IMG/VR virus record: IMGVR_UViG_3300042502_001233
Coordinates: 124,001-188,000 of that record
Reading direction: 5' to 3' (one strand)
Length of the DNA: 64,000 nt
Shown here: positions 13,876 through 44,900 of the stretch, piece by piece
Layout: every line of letters starts with the position of its first letter
Position numbering within the stretch: position 1 is the first letter of the stretch
Notes under the pieces: model-generated
What the model saw: the letters and a program-made list of their open reading frames with translations, nothing else
Database searches by the model: none
Told to the model about the DNA's origin: nothing
Program-made: the position numbers and the translations under genes

Positions 13876-16368
13876 TTATCCAGCTATTTTACCATTTTTA
13901 TTCATTTCCAATTGAGAATTAACCATACTAGCGATTTGAGTTCTAAAAGCTGTGGTTTTCATAATTTCCAGGGCTATTGCATTTGTTCCTGGTATATTTA
14001 TATTGATATTACCACTAACATTCATATCACCATGTTCAACTTCCATTTTTGAAGATTGATTACTTTGTTGATTGATTGCTCTATCAGCTGGTCCATATGG
14101 TTCCATAGATAAAAATCTTTCTTTATTAGGTATCGGTGTTATTTTACCATTTTCTAACACTCCTCTACCTTTAGAAAATTCAGCCCCTAACCCTTTTCTA
14201 GGTGCAAATACAGCATCGTTTTGTGGTTCACTAAAATATTCATTATAAGCACCGATACCACCACCAATTAAACCACCAGCCAAAGCACCCCATGGACCGA
14301 ACATCATACCAAGTGCTGCTCCTTGTAACGCAGCGCTACCAACACCCATACCTTTACCCATAGCATCATTAGGGTCATCTCTTTTACCTCTTAAATAATC
14401 AACACCCATACCAGCAGCACCTAAACCTAAACCAGCACCCATTTTAGCACCAGTACCCCATTTATTTAATTTTGTGGCTTCTCTAGCAGAAGCAAATCTA
14501 CCAGCACCCATACTTCTCATAGTTCCATAATCCTTACCAAACCCAGTACCACCTCTATTACTAGCAGCACCACCCATAGAAAACATACCAGGAGAAGCAC
14601 CACCACCAGAAAAACCTTTTGTACCTATATTAAAACCTTTAGCCAAAGCTAATCCGTTAGCAAACCATGTTGCTAATTTTAACGCCCCCCACGTAGCTAA
14701 AATACCTGTAGGTCCTAAAACATCGGCAATAGTAAATATTATTTTACCAGCAGTAACGACAAATTCACCAACTGTTTTAGCAATAGTTTCAATTTTTTCA
14801 CCCCATTTATTTTCTTCCCATTTATCAGTTAATTCATTAAATTCTGGTAATAATTTTTTATTTATTGTATCAACAAAAGGTAATAAATAAATTTTTATAC
14901 CATTAACAAAATTAGTAAAAGCTTCATCAAATGTTAGAGCTTGTTCTGCCCTTTCTTTCATATCAGCTTTTTGTTTCATATCAATTGCTAAAATTTCTTT
15001 ATCAGTTGTAGTTAAAGCGCTAATAAGTTTTGCTTGACCTTTAACCATAACAGTAGCTTTTCCATCTTTAAATTCAGCTGTGTTTGCAATAAATTCTTGT
15101 AATTCTGGACTAACACCACCAACTTGAGCTTTTATTTTACTCAACTTGAATGCTGCTTTACCAGCTTCAACCAATTTTTCATATTCTAAACCTGTTTGTT
15201 GTGCAACTATTTTTAATCTGTGCATTTCCATAGCACCCATTTCAATACTACCATCTTTTCCAAAACTCATAGATTGTTTTGCAGCGTTTGCAATCTCTTC
15301 AGTCAAACCTTCCATATCATTACGAGCCATATACATCAAATGAAACGGGTCAGCCATTTGTGCCCATGCACCACCCATAACTTGCAATTGTGCTGACATA
15401 TCAACAGCGCCTTCAATATCAAATAGTTTATCAGCCATTCCACCAGCGAATTCCATATCAACACCTAGTTTACTAGCTGTCATAGCCATTTTAGCCAAAC
15501 CTTTAACACCGTCTTTAAAACGATATTTATTTAACATTTTAATGTTTCCAGCAATGTTTTTGATTACCTTTGAAGCGTTAAGACCCATAGCGTGAGAATC
15601 ATTCAAAGTTTGATTCATAAAATCACCAGTTTTTTCAGCTGAAATACCTTGTTTGTCCATATCTGCCGCCATTCTAGCAGCACCTTCAGCACCCAAATCA
15701 GCAAACTTGGATAGTTGACCCAAAGCAACAAGACTTTTTTCATTCATTTGAACACTTCTACCTAGTTCTTCACTATAATCAGATTGTATTTTAGATAAAT
15801 CTTGAATTGTAACACCAATTTTTGATGTTTTTTTAGATGCATCAAGAATATTTTTTCTAAACCCTTCAGATTGGTTAGATAAAACACCCATAGACATTGC
15901 TGAATTTTTAATTGCTTTTTCCATTTCAAAAAGACCTAAAGATTTTACGACACCTTTTAAATTATTGAATAAATTAAAAGATGTTTTTAAAGCAGCGGCA
16001 GTGGTTAAAGAAACTTTATTAGCATCTTTAAGGGCAGAATTATATATTTGACCTTGTTTTTTTAATTTTTCATTTTGCTTATCAAGTAAAATTAATTTTT
16101 CTCTATCAATGTCTAATTGATTTTGTTGTTCTTGAGTCAAAATTAAAGTATTGGCTTTTATTTTATCATCAATATCTTTAATTTTTTGTCTTAAATCATT
16201 TGTTAATTTAATACTTTTATTATAAGTTTTTTGTAACTCAGAATATTTTTTAATATTTTCAATATAAGAATCATAGCTACTATTAATTTCTTTTCTTAAA
16301 TCAGCTTCCTTTTCTATATAATAAAGAGCATCTATTGCTTCTTGTTGTGCTTTAGTTTTTTTAGCCAT
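13876..16368 (-). CDS. Tail tape measure protein
   Basis: 830 aa; Ala/Lys/Met-rich helical body with Gly-rich hydrophobic C-terminal segments; lies downstream of the tube and chaperone genes. Confidence 0.75.
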   Translation of the reverse strand: MAKKTKAQQEAIDALYYIEKEADLRKEINSSYDSYIENIKKYSELQKTYNKSIKLTNDLRQKIKDIDDKIKANTLILTQEQQNQLDIDREKLILLDKQNEKLKKQGQIYNSALKDANKVSLTTAAALKTSFNLFNNLKGVVKSLGLFEMEKAIKNSAMSMGVLSNQSEGFRKNILDASKKTSKIGVTIQDLSKIQSDYSEELGRSVQMNEKSLVALGQLSKFADLGAEGAARMAADMDKQGISAEKTGDFMNQTLNDSHAMGLNASKVIKNIAGNIKMLNKYRFKDGVKGLAKMAMTASKLGVDMEFAGGMADKLFDIEGAVDMSAQLQVMGGAWAQMADPFHLMYMARNDMEGLTEEIANAAKQSMSFGKDGSIEMGAMEMHRLKIVAQQTGLEYEKLVEAGKAAFKLSKIKAQVGGVSPELQEFIANTAEFKDGKATVMVKGQAKLISALTTTDKEILAIDMKQKADMKERAEQALTFDEAFTNFVNGIKIYLLPFVDTINKKLLPEFNELTDKWEENKWGEKIETIAKTVGEFVVTAGKIIFTIADVLGPTGILATWGALKLATWFANGLALAKGFNIGTKGFSGGGASPGMFSMGGAASNRGGTGFGKDYGTMRSMGAGRFASAREATKLNKWGTGAKMGAGLGLGAAGMGVDYLRGKRDDPNDAMGKGMGVGSAALQGAALGMMFGPWGALAGGLIGGGIGAYNEYFSEPQNDAVFAPRKGLGAEFSKGRGVLENGKITPIPNKERFLSMEPYGPADRAINQQSNQSSKMEVEHGDMNVSGNININIPGTNAIALEIMKTTAFRTQIASMVNSQLEMNKNGKIAG

Positions 16369-16374
16369 AATCTA

Positions 16375-17349
16375 TTATTGTTGTTTAGTTTGTGTTGGTT
16401 TATACCCGTCTGAATATAAAAACTTAATATTTACATCTTTTTGTCTAGCTTCTTTTATTTTACCATTTATATCATTATAGTTTTTAGCAATATCACATAA
16501 ATAAACATCTTGTTCTGATAATTTTTCTTTAACATAAATCGTAAATCCAACTTTACCGTTAGTTAATACTTTGTATTTATAATCTTTTTCGTCAAATGAG
16601 AATTTTTTATTAACAGCTTCATAAGTTCCACCTCTTTCTAATTCGAAAGTTTTAGTTTTTCCTTGAGCATTTTCATAATATATCGTAATATCTTCAGAAA
16701 CCACACTAAATAAAGCGGTTCTACCAACAATAAATCCGTCACCCAACTCCCTATTTAATTTATTGGAATGAAAACTTGAAAAGAAATTCAATGCGTTTCT
16801 AACACCTTCACCTTCTGCTTTTTTACCCATTAATTCGGAAACAAAAGATTCCCACCATGGCGTATGTTGCATTAATTTTTTTAATTCTGGGTCATTAATT
16901 AAAGCATTATAAACCGTACCAGGTATGTATTTATTTTCTTCACCAGAAGTTTCTGGGTTTTCCCCATTAACATTAGGTTGTTGTTGTTGTTGTTGTTGAG
17001 TTTGATTAACATTACCACCCAAGTTTTCTAGTGCGTTAAGTTGAAAAGGTGTATCAACAACTTCTTGTTTTTTAGAATTATATATTTTAAAATTAATCAT
17101 TTTAGTTGTTTGATTATATGAATTTACATTGAATGTTACCTTGTCACCTTTTTCAGTCTCACCCATCACATTACCGTTTGTTGGGTCTGTGTTTACAACT
17201 TTTACTTTAAGTATTGAATTAACACCTTTAAACGATAAAATATCACCTATTTTAGCTTGTTTAATAGTATTGTTAATATCAGCAGATTCAGTTAATTGAC
17301 TTTGTAATCTAGAATATTGCTCTTCAGTTATGATTAATTTTTTTGCCAT
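16375..17349 (-). CDS. Putative virion/internal head protein
   Basis: 324 aa; leader MAKKLIITEEQY...LTES; late motif upstream; poly-Q linker. Confidence 0.55.
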   Translation of the reverse strand: MAKKLIITEEQYSRLQSQLTESADINNTIKQAKIGDILSFKGVNSILKVKVVNTDPTNGNVMGETEKGDKVTFNVNSYNQTTKMINFKIYNSKKQEVVDTPFQLNALENLGGNVNQTQQQQQQQPNVNGENPETSGEENKYIPGTVYNALINDPELKKLMQHTPWWESFVSELMGKKAEGEGVRNALNFFSSFHSNKLNRELGDGFIVGRTALFSVVSEDITIYYENAQGKTKTFELERGGTYEAVNKKFSFDEKDYKYKVLTNGKVGFTIYVKEKLSEQDVYLCDIAKNYNDINGKIKEARQKDVNIKFLYSDGYKPTQTKQQ

Positions 17350-17384
17350 AATAAAATTCTTTAATTATAAATATCTTATAAAAT

Positions 17385-17409
17385 AAAAATCCCCAAAAAA
17401 TGGGGATTT
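17385..17409 (-). terminator. Intrinsic terminator after the chaperone genes
   Basis: AATCCCCA...TGGGGATT stem with an adjacent U-tract on the minus strand. Confidence 0.6.
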
Positions 17410-17410
17410 A

Positions 17411-17689
17411 TTAATTGAGTGGTATATTACCAGATTTCATTCTTGATTTTAATGCGTCTCCAGAAATGCTTGTTTTTCTATTACCCTTGCTGTTGGTTTG
17501 GTTTTTCTGTATGTTTTCAACCTCTTCTTGTCTTTCAACGTTTTGTTTCATCAATAAACTTAAAAAGAATCTTCTTTCATAAGTCGGCATACACAGTACA
17601 TCTGTGTAAGACATTTTTAAATGTTGCATACAAATATAAACCTCTTCTAATAACGGAACTTTATAGCTTGATGTTAGGCCAAAAAAAGT
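17411..17689 (-). CDS. Tail assembly chaperone C-terminal extension (probably reached by frameshift)
   Basis: Frame overlaps the upstream gene at a T7 run. The track start at 17740 is TTG inside the upstream gene. Sequence LLEEVYICMQHLKMSYTDVLCMPTYERRFFL resembles chaperone 'T' parts. Confidence 0.55.
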   Translation of the reverse strand, partial: TFFGLTSSYKVPLLEEVYICMQHLKMSYTDVLCMPTYERRFFLSLLMKQNVERQEEVENIQKNQTNSKGNRKTSISGDALKSRMKSGNIPLN

Positions 17690-18950
17690 TGAAGTTAAGT
17701 GGAAGAAAGGTGGCCACAGACCCACCCCCAGGAGTCTCAACCTCTATATTCAAATCAATACCAGATTCAATAGAATCAACATATGCATCAAATGCTCTAG
17801 CATCAGATATTCTCATAGAATTAGCGATGTCTCTAATCATTCCTCTATCTCTACTACCGTTTACTTCAACAATCATTCTTTCTAATCTATATGTATTTGA
17901 ATTATTTACTGGGATGTTTCTTTCTTTTTCATCGGTAACAATTTTTTCGATAGCATCTACATCACCCATAGTCAACAATCTGAATTTAATTTCAGCTTTG
18001 GTCAAAGGTAATTGAAAATAAAACAATCCTTCTTCATCTGGATTTTCATTTAACTCTATTGTTTTTAACTCATTAAGGTTAATTTCAGTATCAAAAGGTT
18101 CGCTTAACTCATCCAACAAAGTAACTGGATACATTTCACCATATGCTGTAGCTCTTAACCACAACATAATAGCATTTCTATCACCAGGCAATAAATCTTT
18201 ATATCTAAGCGTCGGTTCCAATATCTTTCTGTTGATAAGAATCTCTAAAAACTCCCCGCTTTGAAGTAAGTTTGGACTTGTAAGAATGTTTTCATCCGCT
18301 GTAGTCATATACGCTAACCTTACACTCTCTTTTTTGTTTTTGTACAATTTACCTTTTGAAGGTAACGGAATAACGTCAAATGGTGCGTTGTAGTTAGGTT
18401 GACTCAATTCTAGAATATAAGGGTCAACACCAGTTTGTGAAGTCACAAAAGGTTCTATTCTAGGTTGTGTAATAGCTGGTGAAGACGGTTGTGGTGTGTT
18501 GTAACCACTTGGTTGATTTGTTTGCATATTTGTTGTTGTATTATATTGTCTATTCATTGCTTCTTCAGACATTTTTTGATAGTTTTGAGTTTGTTGTCTA
18601 TTTTTAGCTAATTGTTCATCTCTCAGTTTCATCAAATCTTCGTTTGGGTCTTTTTGAGTTACAAATCTAGTAGTCTGTCTTTCAGATAACGCTGGGTCTT
18701 TAACAACACCAACAGTGTTTTTCATTTCTAATTGAGCGGCTGTTCTAGCCATCATCATTTCAACACTATTGTTTTGGTTTAGATAATTGTATTGTTCTCC
18801 TTCAACGTTTTCAGGAACTTTTACTGATGAATAAATTTGATTTACTACTTGTGATTTTTCTGCTTCATACGCGGCCAATTTTGATTGTTCTTCTGCTGCG
18901 TTTTGTATTTGTGATTGCGAAGGAATCACGTTAGGTCTTTTTTCTGACAT
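17661..18950 (-). CDS. Tail assembly chaperone / T4 gp26-like baseplate hub assembly protein
   Basis: 429 aa; DVIPLPSKGKLY...MTTADENILTSPNL...DRNAIMLWLR motifs; lies between tube and tape measure; ends FFWP. Confidence 0.65.
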   Translation of the reverse strand: MSEKRPNVIPSQSQIQNAAEEQSKLAAYEAEKSQVVNQIYSSVKVPENVEGEQYNYLNQNNSVEMMMARTAAQLEMKNTVGVVKDPALSERQTTRFVTQKDPNEDLMKLRDEQLAKNRQQTQNYQKMSEEAMNRQYNTTTNMQTNQPSGYNTPQPSSPAITQPRIEPFVTSQTGVDPYILELSQPNYNAPFDVIPLPSKGKLYKNKKESVRLAYMTTADENILTSPNLLQSGEFLEILINRKILEPTLRYKDLLPGDRNAIMLWLRATAYGEMYPVTLLDELSEPFDTEINLNELKTIELNENPDEEGLFYFQLPLTKAEIKFRLLTMGDVDAIEKIVTDEKERNIPVNNSNTYRLERMIVEVNGSRDRGMIRDIANSMRISDARAFDAYVDSIESGIDLNIEVETPGGGSVATFLPLNFNFFWPNIKL

Positions 18951-19033: not shown

Positions 19034-19058
19034 AAAAACCATCTATATAGATGGTTTT
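19034..19058. terminator. Palindromic terminator after the tail tube gene
   Basis: AAAACCATCTAT/ATAGATGGTTTT inverted repeat. Confidence 0.65.
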
Positions 19059-19107: not shown

Positions 19108-19596
19108 TTAAAACAAAAGTATGGCGCGGTCAAACCTTAACGTTGCAGTAATCTCTGCGATACCGTCATCCTCGAATGATAAGTCACCAAAACCAACGTT
19201 TGTTAACATAGTACCATCCAATAACCATTTCTCGATTACAACACCTGTAGGGTCAAGCATTTCTAACTCTACTGGACGTTTGTAACCAGCAGCATAACCT
19301 TGACGGCCAGTGATTGATTCAGAGTGAAGACGAACCCACTCCATAATTGCTTGTGAAGCAGATGGACCAATTGGGTCACGGAAAGTAACGTCTATCGCCT
19401 CCCAAGTAAATCTACCGATAACCCATGTAGATGTGTTAAGGAAAGGGATTTCTACCTCATTTTGTGTGATAGAAGGTCTAGAAGCAGAAGATAACCACCA
19501 TTGTTGGATACCTAAATCTGCTGGGAATGTAATTAACCAACGATTCTTTTTCTTAGGTTCGTATGGTAAGGGCATTTTCATTAATAAATCAGCCAT
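19108..19596 (-). CDS. Tail tube protein (T4 gp19-like)
   Basis: 162 aa; YEPKKKNRW, SASRP, GRFTWEAIDVTFRDPI, EKWLL...GDL, ITATLRFD motifs. Confidence 0.85.
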   Translation of the reverse strand: MADLLMKMPLPYEPKKKNRWLITFPADLGIQQWWLSSASRPSITQNEVEIPFLNTSTWVIGRFTWEAIDVTFRDPIGPSASQAIMEWVRLHSESITGRQGYAAGYKRPVELEMLDPTGVVIEKWLLDGTMLTNVGFGDLSFEDDGIAEITATLRFDRAILLF

Positions 19597-21124: not shown

Positions 21125-23626
21125 TTAACTTAACATAATTTTTTTTATTCTATTTAATTCTTCCATCAATTTATAGTTCTCATTTAAATCCATACTGTAT
21201 TGACCTTTATCATTTGGTTGAGGTTCAGCACTAGTTTGAGATGGATTTTTTTGTCTAGGCGCTGCACTAACATTTCGTTTTGTTTGTTTAGTTTTACTTT
21301 GTTTACCACTAGCAGCAGCTTGTTTTCTAAGTTTAACCATGTATTGAAACAACGCTATTGAATCATCCAAAAATTGTAATAAATGTTTTTTAAATTTCTT
21401 TCTGTCTTGAGCATTTTTTTCGAATTGTGTTCTAGCAGCATTAGGGTCGGCTTCATTCATTTTACCAATACCACCTAATTTATCAATTAGACCAGATTGT
21501 TTGTATTTACCAGTGTATATTGTTTTGAATATATCATTGATAAAGTTAGCCATATTTTGATATGCTTGTTGGTTTACAGTTACTATGTTGAACATTTTAT
21601 TAAAATCAGTCTTAACTATAGGGTTTTGTCTAAATCTTTCCAAAAATTGGTCAAAAACTTTATCACCAGTTGGTTTAAGGTTTCTAATTTTATTTCTTAA
21701 CTGTTCAACTCTGTTTAATAAATTTTCAAATTCTACAACTCTAGTTGGGCTAACGTTTTTGTTCAAAAACTTAACCAAAGCTTTATCTCTAAAGTATTTT
21801 GCTTCATCCAACATCTCTTCATCCAACAATGCTTCAGCTAAAGTATTTTTAGGTCCTTTACCAAATTTTTTCTCACTGTTAACAATAAAACCAAATAAAT
21901 TACGTAAAGAGTTGTATAAATCATCATTCATTGCTCCATCAGCGCTATTATCAGTTTTTGTTGTTTTTTGTTTTCCAGTATCTACTCCAGTTCCAGTGTC
22001 TACTCCTGTATCTACACCAGTTCCAGTATCTACACCAGTATCTGTACCAGTATCTACACCAGTATCTGTACCAGTATCGTTTCCTGTTTCATCACCTGTT
22101 GGGGCTGGTATCAAACCAACACCACCATCTAACCCACGCATAGATTGATACAACGCGTTAAGTGTTGCAGCTCTTGATGATTTTTGACCTTTCATTCTAA
22201 CCAATTTAACAGCAGCACCAGTAGCTAACAACCCAATACCAACACCAGCTAACACAGGACCTAAACCTATTAACTTACCAGCTAACGCAGTACCAGCTCC
22301 TTTTACAAGCGTTTTAGTTGCTTGTTTAACAACAATAGTTGCAAAGAATTTAGCAGAACTAGATACACCAAATAGGTTTTGTCCACCACTCATACTACCA
22401 AAAGTTTGGTCAGCTTTGTTGAATAAATCACCCATACTAGCTTGAGGGTTAGAACTAATCATTTGTTGTAATTTTTGCATTTGACCCATTGAGTCGCCAC
22501 CACCATTACCATCAAACATGTGACTAACGTTTTCTGAACCAAATTTGTCAACAAATTGCTGCATATCAGCACCAGTTTTAATATCTTTACCCATTAACTT
22601 ACTAGCCCAATGAACAAAACCTTGTTTGTCATCTGGTCCACCAGTAATATCTTGAGTTATAGCTGGTGTTCTAACTATTTTATCACCACCACCTAGTACC
22701 GTTTCTAACCAAGTTTTAAACCATTCAGTTTGAGCCATCCATCCTAATGCACCTAACGCAGCACCAGTTCCAGCCAATATCAATGGTAATTTGTTAGATT
22801 TAAGGGTATCCATCCTTGTACTATCAAAATCTTCACCATCACCTCTTTTAGCTTGTAATTTAGACCTAATATCACCAGAATCTAAAGGGTCTTCGTCAGG
22901 GGCTACGTCTTCATAATCAACATCTTCAATATCGTTATTTGATTTATAGTTACCAGCACTACCTTGTCCACTAACTTTTGGCCCAGTAGTACCCATTTGT
23001 GAATTACCAGTTCTAGCTGGAAGAGCTTCATCTATACCAAAATATTCATCAATTTGACACATTTGTTCTTCATCAAGGTCATATTCTTCATTCATCAAAT
23101 CATCTTCACCTAGTTTGTCTTCACTCTCATCAAAACCAGAATAAACAGCAGCTAAGTCAGTATCTAAGAATTTTTTTGTGTAGTCTCTTAAATCAGTAAT
23201 AATACCATTAGCAGCGTCAATCGGCATATAACCTTCTTCCTGTGGTGCTTTTTTAGTTGCAGCAACAACTGAATCATATATTGCAGCGATTTCCATAACA
23301 GTTTTTAAGAATTGTTGTGGGTCTTTATTATTAGGGAAATCAGGATTTTCTTCTCTAATTTTAGAATCAAGATTTTTAATTAACTCATTACCTTCTTTAT
23401 CAATAATTTGTTGGATTTTTCTTGCAGCTTCTTGGTCAATTTTACCTTTTCCGAAAATTTTACCGTTGGCTTTGTATCTACCTAATTTAGATAATCCGTA
23501 TTTTACAGAATCCCAAAAACCTTCATCTAACCTTTCGTTACCTTCTATCTTTTCTAGTGTTTCTTTAAGGATTTCATTGATGATAACTGTATGTTGTTGT
23601 TCTGTAAGTATTAATTTTTTAGCCAT
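21125..23626 (-). CDS. Putative internal head/ejection protein with hydrophobic helices and DTG repeats
   Basis: 833 aa; leader MAKKLILTEQQ; many (L/I/M)xE motifs; two Gly/Ala-rich hydrophobic stretches. Confidence 0.55.
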   Translation of the reverse strand: MAKKLILTEQQHTVIINEILKETLEKIEGNERLDEGFWDSVKYGLSKLGRYKANGKIFGKGKIDQEAARKIQQIIDKEGNELIKNLDSKIREENPDFPNNKDPQQFLKTVMEIAAIYDSVVAATKKAPQEEGYMPIDAANGIITDLRDYTKKFLDTDLAAVYSGFDESEDKLGEDDLMNEEYDLDEEQMCQIDEYFGIDEALPARTGNSQMGTTGPKVSGQGSAGNYKSNNDIEDVDYEDVAPDEDPLDSGDIRSKLQAKRGDGEDFDSTRMDTLKSNKLPLILAGTGAALGALGWMAQTEWFKTWLETVLGGGDKIVRTPAITQDITGGPDDKQGFVHWASKLMGKDIKTGADMQQFVDKFGSENVSHMFDGNGGGDSMGQMQKLQQMISSNPQASMGDLFNKADQTFGSMSGGQNLFGVSSSAKFFATIVVKQATKTLVKGAGTALAGKLIGLGPVLAGVGIGLLATGAAVKLVRMKGQKSSRAATLNALYQSMRGLDGGVGLIPAPTGDETGNDTGTDTGVDTGTDTGVDTGTGVDTGVDTGTGVDTGKQKTTKTDNSADGAMNDDLYNSLRNLFGFIVNSEKKFGKGPKNTLAEALLDEEMLDEAKYFRDKALVKFLNKNVSPTRVVEFENLLNRVEQLRNKIRNLKPTGDKVFDQFLERFRQNPIVKTDFNKMFNIVTVNQQAYQNMANFINDIFKTIYTGKYKQSGLIDKLGGIGKMNEADPNAARTQFEKNAQDRKKFKKHLLQFLDDSIALFQYMVKLRKQAAASGKQSKTKQTKRNVSAAPRQKNPSQTSAEPQPNDKGQYSMDLNENYKLMEELNRIKKIMLS
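21978..22082 (-). repeat. In-frame DTG(T/V) tandem repeat
   Basis: Encodes DTGTDTGVDTGTDTGVDTGTGVDTGVDTGTGVDTG. Confidence 0.85.
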
Positions 23627-41937: not shown

Positions 41938-44900
41938 CTAGAAACCCCAATCTTCTTCTGGTTCTTTTTTTTGTGAATCAGCTTCTTTATCCATACCATT
42001 TACAATAGCTAATTCGTCAGCGTTAACCTTTATTGGGTCACTAATTACATAACCATCTGGCATTTCACCATATGTATCGTCATATTCATCATCCAACAAT
42101 AAATCTTCATCAGTTCTGATTATGTTACCATCTCCATCCTCTTCCAATTCTTCATCATCGTCTTCATTTTCAGAATAAACACGTTTCTTTTTAACCTCTT
42201 TCACTTCAACCAAAAACTCTTTAGCTTTTTCGTTAAATTTCTCAGCCATATCTTTAATATCAGGTGTAGTGTTTTCTACACCATAATTAAATGTATCACC
42301 ACTAAGATGTTTATGTTCAGCTAAATAATCTAACCATAATTCATATCTATCATCATCATTTTCCAAAGATTTTTCTTTGTAGAATAAATCTCTTTCGATG
42401 GCTTGTTTTCTATAATCCATGATATCTTTAACTGGTCGTAAAGGTTCATCCCATTTTCTAGAATAAAACATTTCGGTTTCTTCATCAATATTACAAATAA
42501 CCAAAACATCTATAGGTATCAAACCATCTTTAAGTAGTTTTTCATAATCATCAGCTTCTAAGTGTTTAAAAACATGTTCTAACCTTTCTTTTTCATCTTT
42601 TAAACCTTCTTCCTTTGCAACACGCATTCTCTCGTGGTAATCACTTCTAAGTACGTCCCATTCTTCTTGTGTCATGTTGTTTGGTAATTTATCAACTCTT
42701 TCCCAGAATTTAATTTCTTTGTCTTCCATAATCATAAGGTCTTTGTAAGAGTCTTGGTCAGTATCTTTAAATGGTTTACCAGAAACTAAACTGCATTGAG
42801 ATTTTGTAAACACCATTCTGTCTTTTAATTTCTCGTATGTTTTTTTAGTTTCTTTATCTTTAACCTTAACAATATCCAAAAGAATGTTGTATCGAATCTC
42901 AGGGTCAAAACAAACCAACAATGGTCTAACCTTTTTATTAAACGCCTCCAAATATCTAGCAACGTTATATTCATCAGTAAATAACTCTTCTTCAATTTGA
43001 GATATTCTTTCTTCCATATCAGCAATATTTGAATCACCTTTCTCTAATGAAGCTATGGCTTTTTTAAGCATCTCTAATTCTTTAACAGCTTCAAAATCAC
43101 GCTCAACAGTTGCTGGGTCTATAAGTTTACAGTTTAACTGAACTTCTTTAGTTACCTCTGGTGGATGATTTTCAAAACCATTAGCACTATACCATTTTTC
43201 AAGTTGTTTATTTGTCATTTTATTATGGTAAACAGTTTTCAAATCACCTTGAGATTTAGAAGTACCAGTGTTTATGTAATACAATACATCACCTAAATTC
43301 AAATCTAACCCTTCTCTCATCGCTAATTCCATATGCGCTTGTTTTGGCATAGGGTTACCAGCTTTGTTCTTCATGGTAGCTTTTTTCTTGTACTCTGGCA
43401 TAGATAATTTAACTTTAGCTTTTGATGCAATTTTAACCAATGGAATTTGATAATTATAAATCTTATCAACATATTCATAGTAATAATTAATAAATGAATA
43501 ACCATCACCATCCAATAACATACGAATCGCTTTACCCAAAAAATCTTCGATATAAACGGACATCTTTTTAGATTTAACTGAGTTACCCACAAGTTTAATT
43601 TTACCACCTATATCGTTCGCGTAGTTCTTTCTAGCGAAGTTTATTGTAGAGCTACAAACATCATCTAGGTCTAACCCCATACGACCTTCCATGTAAGTTT
43701 CGTTAAACTCAGCCAGAACAGCATCAATACCAATAAGTTCTTTACCACCATCATCACTAGTTTTCCAGTGACTACCTTTAGCAACATACTTGATATCGTT
43801 TAGGTTTTCTGGTGCTGCGAAGTTGAAACCATCGGTATTATGAGCTATAATACCGTTTATCCCACAAATAAAAGTACCATCTTCTGTTGAAATATCATAA
43901 ACGAAATCATTTTTATCTTTATTCAAAATAATTTCGTTTTTCCAAACTTCATTAGTTTTCTTTTTTGTTTTATCTGTAAATGAAGAGTTATTTCTATTTC
44001 TATTTTTTAATGAAAATGAAATAAAATTTTGTTTATCAGACCTTGTTTTAATCTTATATTCAATATTTAATTCTTTAAGTAATAAAGCAATACCAGCCAT
44101 AGCTATTTGTGACTTCATACCAATATCCGAACAATCCTCTATAGTATCACCATAACCATCTGAAGCAAAAACACCTTCAATAAACGCTTTTTTAGTTTCT
44201 TCAGACGCGTTTAATATCATATATGGTATTTTCTTTTCTCTATATGATGTGTAAAAATGTTCACAAAAATTATTAGCAAAATCAACATTATGGACGATTA
44301 AATTATAAACACCACTTGATTTCATATTATTTTTTATCACCCCATCAATAGCGTATTCATCTTTAAGTATAGTCTGTAATTTTTCCAATAAATCAATTCT
44401 TGAATTAGAGATTTTCCAATCACTTCTTTTACCTTTATTTATATGTACTTCACCAGTTTTTATAGATTTATATTTTTGTGTTCTACCTGAACAATTAGCT
44501 GAACCATCACCTAAGAAAAAACCACACAAATAAGCTTTATTAACATTTAAACCAGTAGCAACATTGTTTTTCGGTATTTCGTATGTGTCTATACTATCAA
44601 ATCTTTTAAGTTCTGATGGTTTAACTTCTTTACCATTTTGAAATAACGAATGGTCTTCAGTAACATTTATTAACCTATCTTTAGTTGTTATTCTATGAAT
44701 GTTTTTATCTGTTCCATGTCTATAGACATACTTTATATCCTTCCAACCATTACGTGTTAAAACTTCAAATGGTTTTTCTTCAAAATCTCTAAATTTATCT
44801 GCATCTAAAAATTCTGAATTTTCATTAAACAAATCACATATAGGTAAAACATCGATATAATTTTTTTGTGATTTATATCTGACATAAACAGGTGTATCAA

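What the first reader, a model, noticed from the sequence alone, without database searches (positions are those of the whole stretch)
17660..17700. Tail chaperone frameshift candidate in the unusual +1/-2 direction
The chaperone ends AAC TTT TTT TGG CCT...TAA. The downstream ORF reads ACT TTT TTT GGC across the same T7 run (17681-17687) and has no ATG until an internal Met. G/GT-type frameshifts before the tape measure gene are established (lambda -1, Mu -2). Here tRNA-Phe could re-pair perfectly after a +1 or -2 slip. A separate gene (16375..17349) lies between this site and the tape measure gene.
Basis: partly seen in the sequence, partly recalled or inferred. Interest (0 to 1): 0.65.

Follow-up and report, generated by a model that had tools for sequence, protein, structure and literature searches.

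The report
Conserved +1 frameshift in tail chaperone
A 362-kb freshwater phage very probably makes a short and a long tail-assembly chaperone from one gene, by a ribosome slip of one base forward on a run of U's; about 200 related phage sequences keep the same device, and phage T4 appears to get the same pair from two separate genes, 26 and 51.

Summary
On the minus strand a 429-aa gene (17661-18950) ends AAC TTT TTT TGG CCT ... TAA. The +1 frame stays open from before the T7 run (17681-17687) to 17411.

It is far more than chance:
- Among 206 distinct homologous loci, 197 have a +1 ORF of at least 50 codons past the 0-frame stop. Every one keeps an in-frame UUU followed by U or C.
- The +1 peptide is conserved from the slip site onward, upstream of any Met.
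- Third-position variability changes phase exactly at a 12-nt invariant block.
- Two loci have lost the UUU_Y. In just these two, the extension is a separate gene with its own ATG.
- Three natural proteins carry the same two parts fused in frame.

Interrupted variants (TTC TTT TGG, TTT CTA TGG) fit a +1 slip of tRNA-Phe. They do not fit a -2 slip, nor polymerase slippage as the shared mechanism.

The protein belongs to the T4 gp26/gp51 "baseplate hub" family, and its N-terminal part has the tail-assembly-chaperone fold. T4 gp26 (short) and gp51 (long) are paralogues, and the gp51 tail probably matches the frameshift extension.

I found no mention in the literature searched, and the gene callers and records seen call the extension a hypothetical protein or miss most of it. 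No product has been observed.

The parts
17661..18950 (-). 0-frame gene, 429 aa (P0001): the short chaperone form. Residues 1-184 are a Q/N-rich, partly helical N-terminal addition. Residues 185-429 are the gp26/gp51-like domain.
   Evidence: ORF and translation. Weak PF12322 match (21.9 bits) and phrog_150 'baseplate hub'. The AF2 model matches viral 'baseplate hub subunit / hub assembly protein' models down to E 3e-24. It is the only copy in the 362-kb genome.
17676..17687 (-). Slip site: TTT TTT T (17687-17681) followed by GG CCT. These 12 bases are invariant in the window's clade.
   Evidence: Entropy is 0 at all 12 positions in 57 distinct sequences, while the codon before the block varies. 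Site classes across 206 distinct loci are.
17661..17680 (-). Overlap of the two frames, from the slip site to the 0-frame stop. 0 frame: W P N I K L stop. +1 frame: G L T S S Y K.
   Evidence: Variability here peaks at the third position of the +1 frame, not of the 0 frame (1.27 against 0.39 and 0.41 bits).
17411..17680 (-). +1-frame extension, 89 aa (P0003) plus its stop: three predicted helices with the conserved motif MP..ER. The first ATG is at 17629-17627.
   Evidence: Conserved from its first residue in 243 loci. The profile finds 1,652 cluster representatives. It is the only copy in the genome.
17411..18950 (-). Modelled long form, 512 aa (P0004): 0 frame up to ..N F F, then +1 frame from G L T.
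   Evidence: Collinear with the natural in-frame long forms P0144, P0184 and P0188. AF2 gives pLDDT 87.6 for residues 185-512.
17387..17409 (-). Terminator-like hairpin plus T tract, 2 nt after the stop of the +1 ORF.
   Evidence: This is a consensus match only.
19108..19596 (-). Tail tube gene, upstream neighbour.
   Evidence: phrog_4542 tail tube, E 9e-26.
16375..17349 (-). 324-aa gene of unknown function between the chaperone and the tape measure. It is variable and not part of the device.
   Evidence: No family or atlas hit. A match (mostly 25-44% identity) was found in 42 of 79 clade loci; in several loci with ample downstream sequence there is none, and the tape measure follows directly.
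13876..16368 (-). Tail length tape-measure gene.
   Evidence: phrog_167, E 2.9e-12.

Best explanation
Gene 17661-18950 encodes a tail/baseplate-hub assembly chaperone of the T4 gp26/gp51 family. Most ribosomes stop at TAA 17663-17661 and make the 429-aa short form. A fraction slip one base forward while peptidyl-tRNA-Phe (anticodon GAA) sits on an in-frame UUU followed by a pyrimidine (UUU_U here), re-pair on UUY, and read GGC CUA ... to the TAA at 17413-17411. That gives a 512-aa long form (..N-F-F-G-L-T-S-S-Y-K..) carrying an 89-aa, three-helix C-terminal extension. The short and long forms would correspond to lambda gpG and gpGT, and to T4 gp26 (short) and gp51 (long, not present in the finished particle). 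What is shown: the anatomy, its conservation, the frame of selective constraint, the co-variation of slip site and start codon, natural in-frame fusions, and family and fold relations. What is inferred: that the shift is ribosomal and +1, its efficiency, and what each form binds.
For: (1) In the window's clade, 78 of 78 loci that reach the site keep N TTT TTT TGG CCT. The +1 frame stays open 80-90 codons in all complete ones but one. The -1 frame closes within 1-22 codons.
(2) Across five clades (31-97% identity), 197 of 206 distinct loci have a +1 ORF of at least 50 codons. Six more are cut by a contig end.
(3) All 243 loci that have the complete +1 ORF have an in-frame UUU_Y in the stretch where the shift could occur.
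(4) The +1 peptide is conserved from its first residue (G-L-T-x-x-Y-K/R). The first Met lies 8-31 residues in, and is often the Met inside the conserved MP..ER motif. In many loci a +1-frame stop lies directly upstream of the site, so no upstream start is possible there.
(5) Third-position variability switches from the 0 frame to the +1 frame exactly after the invariant 12 nt, including inside the overlap. A variant strain differs at 17630, 17633, 17648, 17651 and 17654, all third positions of the +1 frame and all upstream of the first ATG.
(6) Natural controls: L257 and L263 have lost UUU_Y (TTC TTG TAT; TTC CTT TGG CCA). Only there is the extension homologue a separate gene with its own ATG, in another frame.
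(7) Natural in-frame long forms P0144, P0184 and P0188 combine PF12322 (34.9-62.9 bits) with the extension (E 2e-17 to 5.5e-16), and are collinear with the modelled fusion.
(8) The genome holds one copy of the domain and one of the extension.
(9) The interrupted sites TTC TTT TGG, TTT CTA TGG, TTT CTA TTC and TTC TTT CGT allow UUU to UUY re-pairing after +1 but no good re-pairing after -2.
(10) The gene lies after the tube gene and before the tape measure. The model's residues 1-95 give the three solved tail assembly chaperones as top hits: 3fgx Z 7.0, 3klu Z 5.3, 2ob9 Z 5.3.
(11) T4 gp26 and gp51 both match PF12322 end to end, and gp51 is about 45 aa longer at the C-terminus. The extension profile against an alignment of gp51 C-termini gives hhalign E 5.8e-4 with MP..ER aligned, with atlas leads to Gp51_C clusters.
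Against: No protein, RNA or ribosome data exist for this phage: no RNA run holds it, so neither the long product nor the shift efficiency has been seen. On a pure T7 run, +1, -2 and loss of one U by RNA polymerase all give the same frame and cannot be told apart from sequence. No stimulator was found: there is no conserved downstream RNA structure and no Shine-Dalgarno-like element upstream in the window's clade. That is unusual for an efficient +1 site. The window protein itself scores below Pfam's cut-off for PF12322 (21.9 against 24.5 bits). The fold matches to chaperones are modest (Z 5.3-7.0). The link to the gp51 C-terminus is only moderate (29% hhalign probability). L257 and L263 show the extension can work unfused in some phages.
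Confidence: 0.85

Rival explanations
1. Two ordinary genes: the downstream ORF is translated on its own from ATG 17629 (72 aa) or from an upstream TTG, and the overlap is incidental.
For: The window has an ATG at 17629-17627 with GAAGAGG 11 nt upstream. Gene callers report 59-132-aa 'hypothetical proteins' here. In L257 and L263 the domain really is a separate gene.
Against: The ATG is not conserved: it is Thr, Ile or Leu in many relatives. The GAAGAGG encodes the conserved Glu-Glu. Residues upstream of the ATG are conserved and under +1-frame constraint back to the run. Many loci have a +1 stop right before the site and no start codon after it. The called starts are inconsistent. The 12-nt block is invariant, including the synonymous positions of both Phe codons.
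Confidence: 0.04
2. Transcriptional slippage: RNA polymerase drops one U (or adds two) on the T7 run, and ordinary translation of the edited mRNA gives the long form.
For: 152 of 206 distinct loci have an uninterrupted T7. Within the window's clade the whole run is invariant, including the first TTT, which a single-codon ribosomal slip would not need. No RNA stimulator was found.
Against: About a quarter of distinct loci keep the same frame offset with interrupted runs of 3-4 T: TTT CTT T in 28, TTC TTT T in 12, plus TTT CTA and TTC TTT C. These are too short for the known slippage, which by my knowledge of dnaX in Thermus and mxiE in Shigella needs about 9 A or T. It could still contribute in T7 lineages.
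Confidence: 0.08
3. A ribosomal -2 shift on U7, giving N-F-F-F-G-L-T.. with one more Phe than the +1 product.
For: On U UUU UUU, tRNA-Phe re-pairs perfectly after -2. It leads to the same frame as +1.
Against: In TTC TTT TGG, TTT CTA TGG, TTT CTA TTC and TTC TTT CGT, a -2 move puts the P-site tRNA on TCT, ACT or similar mismatched codons, whereas +1 gives UUU to UUU or UUC. The natural in-frame long form P0188 reads ..S-I-F-G-L-S.., the spacing of the +1 product (weak evidence).
Confidence: 0.06
4. Artefact or decay: a homopolymer miscall in the assembly, or a recently broken gene.
For: Homopolymer runs are a classic source of false frameshifts. A T6 would fuse the frames.
Against: Four independent metagenome assemblies show the same T7 with no inserted or deleted base. 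More than 190 distinct loci, including cultured phages (Microcystis phage Mel-JY01, Flavobacterium phage immuto), keep the offset. Several have no homopolymer at all.
Confidence: 0.01

Closest known systems
Lambda gpG/gpGT, and the conserved tail-assembly-chaperone frameshift of long-tailed phages (Xu et al. 2004, cited from memory)
   Same: Two overlapping reading frames lie between the tail tube gene and the tape-measure gene. A short form and a C-terminally extended long form come from one start, with the slip site just before the short form's stop. The N-terminal subdomain has the chaperone fold.
   Different: The direction is +1, not -1. The site is UUU_Y rather than an X XXY YYZ heptamer. 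The protein is about 250 aa (429 aa here) of the PF12322 family, against about 140 aa for gpG. There is no sequence relation to gpG or gpT. In this window another gene separates it from the tape measure.
Phage T4 gp26 and gp51 (baseplate hub assembly chaperones)
   Same: The domain family is the same: both T4 proteins match PF12322 over their full length, and the window model matches viral 'baseplate hub' models. The T4 pair likewise consists of a short and a long form, and gp51 carries a C-terminal tail that aligns with the frameshift extension, MP..ER included. A review lists both as hub assembly chaperones and says gp51 is absent from the particle (PMC3004832).
   Different: T4 uses two separate genes transcribed divergently. 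Its gene 26 ends ..TTC TTT GAG.. with the +1 frame closed, and neither gene adjoins the tube gene. The homology of the two C-terminal tails is probable but not proven (hhalign probability 29%).
The prfB (RF2) +1 frameshift, CUU UGA C (from memory)
   Same: A +1 slip of a P-site tRNA onto an overlapping U-rich codon. The variant TTT CTT TGG could also slip CUU to UUU as RF2 does.
   Different: There is no in-frame stop in the A site, no upstream Shine-Dalgarno stimulator in the window's clade, and no autoregulatory logic.
The +1 frameshifts in structural genes of Listeria phage PSA (Zimmer et al. 2003, from memory)
   Same: +1 recoding near the 3' end of a phage structural-module gene, giving a C-terminally extended form.
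   Different: PSA recodes the capsid and major tail proteins, at different sites and with an RNA stimulator. The proteins are unrelated.

Membership tests
G/GT-type tail assembly chaperone with programmed frameshift | The gene lies between the tail tube gene and the tape-measure gene | tested here: met
   The order is tube 19108-19596, chaperone, (variable 324-aa gene), tape measure 13876-16368. The two are directly adjacent in part of the clade and in phage immuto.
G/GT-type tail assembly chaperone with programmed frameshift | An overlapping second frame without its own start, entered at a conserved slippery site near the end of the first | tested here: met
   The natural controls are L257 and L263.
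G/GT-type tail assembly chaperone with programmed frameshift | -1 direction on an X XXY YYZ heptamer | tested here: not met
   The second frame is +1 in 197 of 206 distinct loci. The -1 frame closes within 1-22 codons in the window's clade.
G/GT-type tail assembly chaperone with programmed frameshift | Tail assembly chaperone fold | tested here: inconclusive
   The top three of 48,161 chains are the three solved chaperones, but Z is only 7.0, 5.3 and 5.3, over model residues 1-95. Foldseek against the PDB found nothing.
G/GT-type tail assembly chaperone with programmed frameshift | Both products are made, both are needed for tail assembly, and both are absent from virions | not testable with these tools
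   No RNA or protein data exist.
PF12322 T4_baseplate (T4 gp26/gp51) | HMM score above Pfam's gathering cut-off (24.5 bits) | tested here: not met
   The window protein scores 21.9 bits, E 1.5e-4, over residues 206-343. Relatives reached through the window's profile do pass: P0144, P0184, P0188, P0194 and P0195 score 34.9-62.9 bits.
PF12322 T4_baseplate (T4 gp26/gp51) | Same fold as annotated gp26/gp51-type proteins | tested here: met
   64 viral models match at E <= 0.001. They are named baseplate hub subunit, hub assembly protein or hub assembly chaperone. The best named one is Bacillus phage SP-15, E 1e-18, TM 0.84.
PF28602 Gp51_C | Sequence or profile match of the extension to the C-terminal domain of gp51 | tested here: inconclusive
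   hhalign of A1 against A4 gives E 5.8e-4, probability 29%, 49 columns. Atlas gives cosine 0.93 and TM 0.59/0.75 to Gp51_C clusters. The model is not in the local Pfam copy.
PF20546 DUF6760 | HMM score above the cut-off (27 bits) | tested here: not met
   The window extension scores 17.5-18.4 bits. Only 5 of 41 diverse extensions match at E <= 0.01.

The most novel reading that the evidence does not exclude
A stimulator-free +1 ribosomal frameshift at UUU_Y is the ancestral and widespread way in which large contractile-tailed phages make the short and long forms of the gp26/gp51-type hub and tail chaperone. The profile of the extension finds 1,652 cluster representatives. T4 genes 26 and 51 would be a duplicated, hard-wired version of the same pair, which would explain two T4 hub-assembly proteins, one of which a 2010 review still called of unknown function. 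As far as I could see, the device is unannotated.
Probability: 0.55. Interest if true: 0.78.

Novelty: new variant of a known kind. Interest (0 to 1): 0.68.

Why it matters
Four reasons.

1. Annotation. In the records and gene calls I saw, the downstream frame is called as an orphan 'hypothetical protein' with arbitrary starts, or mostly missed. The extension profile finds 1,652 cluster representatives, most of them small ORFs of this kind. The long chaperone is absent from those annotations.

2. Recoding. This would be a large natural series of +1 sites with a minimal motif (UUU followed by a pyrimidine) and no detectable stimulator. It comes with built-in controls: lineages that replaced the slip by a separate gene or by an in-frame fusion.

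3. Phage assembly. It ties T4 gp26 and gp51 to the gpG/gpGT logic of lambda. [quoted passage not shown] The link gives a testable idea of why T4 needs both.

4. Testability. Two cultured phages carry the device: Flavobacterium phage immuto and Microcystis phage Mel-JY01.

Tried and rejected
- Word search for in-frame fused relatives of the window's extension found none. The exhaustive profile search later found three.
- DUF6760 was only a weak, sub-threshold lead and appears in no paper.
- Literature searches for a gp26/gp51 frameshift, or for this chaperone in jumbo phages, returned nothing relevant. Two searches failed on syntax.
- The single-sequence AF2 model of the 512-aa fusion was useless, pLDDT 37.
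- Alignment A5, which mixed full-length and extension-only rows, was scrambled and was discarded.
- Foldseek against the PDB gave no match. Profiles A1 and A6 against PDB sequences gave nothing meaningful.
- The predicted complex of the tube protein with the extension gave no verdict, score 0.00. It is evidence neither for nor against binding.
- The downstream RNA has no consensus structure. The window's own fold has z = -0.8.
- The genome-wide six-frame search with PF12322 found nothing, even at the known locus, so it is uninformative. The profile A6 was used instead.
- TAG recoding was considered because of a tRNA with a CUA anticodon. Coverage by long ORFs hardly changes (0.758 to 0.775), so no other code is claimed.
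- The four-base step TGGC=G is only a device to write the +1 product. It is not a claim about the genetic code.
- Operators' notes: read laying was given 1,701 letters.

Full report
WHAT IS THERE. The window is bases 124001-188000 of a 362,018-bp virus record that CheckV rates complete. It has 31.4% G+C and occurs in many freshwater lake metagenomes. All genes around the finding lie on the minus strand. In order they are:
- an 833-aa ORF, 21125-23626;
- the tail tube gene, 19108-19596 (phrog_4542, E 9e-26);
- a 429-aa ORF, 17661-18950;
- an overlapping +1-frame ORF, open 17411-17743;
- a 324-aa ORF, 16375-17349, with no family;
- the tape-measure gene, 13876-16368 (phrog_167).
The 429-aa ORF ends AAC TTT TTT TGG CCT AAC ATC AAG CTA TAA. 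The T7 run is 17687-17681. The +1 frame reads ACT TTT TTT GGC CTA across it, and its first ATG is at 17629-17627.

IS IT REAL AND MORE THAN CHANCE? Contigs from four other lake metagenomes span the run without any inserted or deleted base. I gathered 259 homologous loci from IMG/VR and GenBank phages, of which 206 are distinct.

In the window's own clade (47-97% identity over the last 100 residues), all 78 loci that reach the site keep N TTT TTT TGG CCT. The +1 frame continues 80-90 codons beyond the 0-frame stop in every complete locus but one. The -1 frame closes after 1-22 codons.

Over all clades, 197 of the 206 distinct loci have a +1 ORF of at least 50 codons. Six more are cut by a contig end, one (L033) is truncated, and two are discussed below.

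In 57 distinct sequences of the window's clade, the twelve bases TTTTTTTGGCCT have zero entropy while the preceding codon varies freely. Variability peaks at the third position of the 0 frame upstream of the block. From the first base after it, the peak moves to the third position of the +1 frame, including inside the 20-nt overlap. One variant strain differs from the window at 17630, 17633, 17648, 17651 and 17654. All five are third positions of the +1 frame, and all lie upstream of the first ATG.

NO INDEPENDENT START. The +1 peptide is conserved from its first residue (G-L-T-x-x-Y-K/R ... M-P-x-x-x-R). The first Met lies 8 to 31 residues in, and in many loci it is the Met of the conserved MP motif itself. 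In many loci a +1-frame stop lies immediately before the site. Gene callers give these ORFs inconsistent starts, 59-132 aa, and all that carry a name are 'hypothetical protein'.

NATURAL CONTROLS. L257 and L263 have lost every in-frame UUU at the site (TTC TTG TAT and TTC CTT TGG CCA). In exactly these two, the extension homologue is a separate gene in another frame, with its own ATG and about 20 extra N-terminal residues.

The opposite case also exists. An exhaustive profile search with the extension (1,652 representatives at E <= 0.001, 400 at <= 1e-10) found mostly small orphan ORFs. It also found three proteins of 308-313 aa in which the PF12322 domain (34.9-62.9 bits) and the extension are fused in frame. 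The modelled +1 product aligns with these without a gap at the junction. The window's genome has a single copy of the domain and a single copy of the extension, so a long form can only arise here by recoding.

WHICH MECHANISM? The site classes among distinct loci are:
- TTT TTT TGG: 152
- TTT CTT TGG: 28
- TTC TTT TGG: 12
- TTT CTA TGG: 3
- CTT TTT TGG: 3
- TTT TTT TAC: 2
- TTT CTT TAC, TTT TTT TTC, TTT CTA TTC and TTC TTT CGT: 1 each

The only element common to all is an in-frame UUU followed by U or C. All 243 loci with a complete +1 ORF have one in the stretch where a shift could occur. tRNA-Phe (GAA) re-pairs on UUU or UUC after a +1 move. After a -2 move it would land on TCT or ACT in the interrupted variants. 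Runs of three or four T are also too short for polymerase slippage.

I therefore favour a ribosomal +1 shift as the shared mechanism. On the window's pure T7, though, -2 or a transcriptional contribution cannot be excluded from sequence alone. No conserved RNA structure follows the site, and the window's clade has no Shine-Dalgarno-like element upstream. The genome avoids the motif elsewhere: 6 in-frame TTT TTT T against about 18 expected. It also encodes three tRNA-Phe and one tRNA-Trp.

WHAT THE PROTEIN IS. Residues 196-343 match PF12322 'T4_baseplate' and phrog_150 'baseplate hub' weakly. An AF2 model of residues 185-512 of the long form, built on 50 sequences, has pLDDT 87.6 and pTM 0.73. 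It shows a confident domain, a flexible linker at the junction and three helices in the extension. It matches 64 viral models named baseplate hub subunit, hub assembly protein or hub assembly chaperone, down to E 3e-24.

Against 48,161 solved chains, the three best matches all fall on model residues 1-95: 3fgx (Z 7.0), 3klu YqbN (Z 5.3) and 2ob9, the HK97 tail assembly chaperone (Z 5.3). A paper describes these three entries as phage tail assembly chaperones (PMC9603447). The Z scores are modest, so I treat the fold as supporting evidence only.

THE T4 CONNECTION. T4 gp26 (208 aa) and gp51 (249 aa) both match PF12322 over their whole length (E 9e-64 and 4e-52), so they are paralogues. gp26 ends ..E-F-F-E-L-L, at the position equivalent to the window's ..N-F-F-W-P.., and its +1 frame is closed. 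gp51 runs about 45 residues further. That tail (Pfam 38.1 Gp51_C) aligns with the extension profile at hhalign E 5.8e-4, with the MP..ER motif in register.

In L270, and probably in L269, a short PF12322 gene ending ..F-F-W-P.. is directly followed by an in-frame long-form gene. That is a T4-like pair. The T4 tail review lists gp26 and gp51 as hub assembly chaperones. [quoted passage not shown]

My reading is that one gene plus a +1 shift, a separate extension gene, an in-frame fusion next to a short paralogue, and T4's genes 26 and 51 are alternative ways to supply a short and a long chaperone. That reading is an inference.

LIMITS. No RNA or protein evidence exists for this phage. The partners of either form are unknown, and the one complex prediction gave no verdict. 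The literature library may lack subscription papers that already describe this, so I rate it a new variant of a known kind rather than something categorically new.

Noticed in passing
Whole genome G000, outside the window: 954-57943 and 354351-357705: ARAGORN finds 45 tRNA genes in the 362-kb genome. They include three tRNA-Phe(GAA), one tRNA-Trp(CCA) and one tRNA with a CUA anticodon (44350-44423) that would read UAG. Treating TAG as sense barely changes long-ORF coverage (0.758 to 0.775), so there is no sign of genome-wide recoding.
   Followed up: partly
window 16375-17349 (-): The 324-aa gene between the chaperone and the tape measure has a poly-Q stretch and no family, atlas or PHROG match. 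A match (mostly 25-44% identity) was found in 42 of 79 clade loci. In several loci with ample downstream sequence there is none, and the tape-measure gene starts about 100-200 nt after the +1 ORF.
   Followed up: partly
window 18399-18950 (-), residues 1-184 of the 429-aa protein: The window's clade carries a Q/N-rich, partly helical N-terminal addition of about 185 residues. Other clades lack it: their proteins are 240-300 aa.
   Followed up: no
window 17387-17409 (-) and 19035-19058 (both strands): Terminator-like hairpins bracket the chaperone-plus-extension unit. One lies 2 nt after the +1 ORF stop, not after the 0-frame stop. The other lies between the tube gene and the chaperone. In lake metagenomes, unrelated contigs share 17364-17396, and contig depth peaks in the bin 17357-17413. 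That suggests a short element shared with other phages.
   Followed up: partly
L033:3655-3838: One close relative has its +1 ORF cut short after ..Y-E-R-R-Y-F, 34 codons past the 0-frame stop, while two near-identical loci (L035, L037) are intact. This may be a mutation or an assembly error.
   Followed up: no
L269:1-1720 and L270:603-2356: These loci carry tandem PF12322 paralogues: a short form ending ..F-F-W-P.. followed by an in-frame long form. In L269 the long-form gene starts 8 nt before the short form's stop, in its +1 frame, so a slip at the retained F-F-W-P site would read into it. I did not inspect the nucleotides of that site.
   Followed up: partly
L001:6833-6943 and L002:6740-6976: In the GenBank records of Flavobacterium phage immuto and Microcystis phage Mel-JY01, the extension is annotated as a truncated 36-aa ORF and as a 78-aa ORF with an arbitrary start. 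Neither carries a frameshift annotation.
   Followed up: yes
Whole genome, ORFs of at least 200 aa: In-frame UUU is followed by A or G about three times as often as by U or C (2,032 against 677). In-frame TTT TTT T is about three times rarer than codon frequencies predict, which would fit avoidance of slippery UUU_Y contexts. This is a crude count.
   Followed up: no
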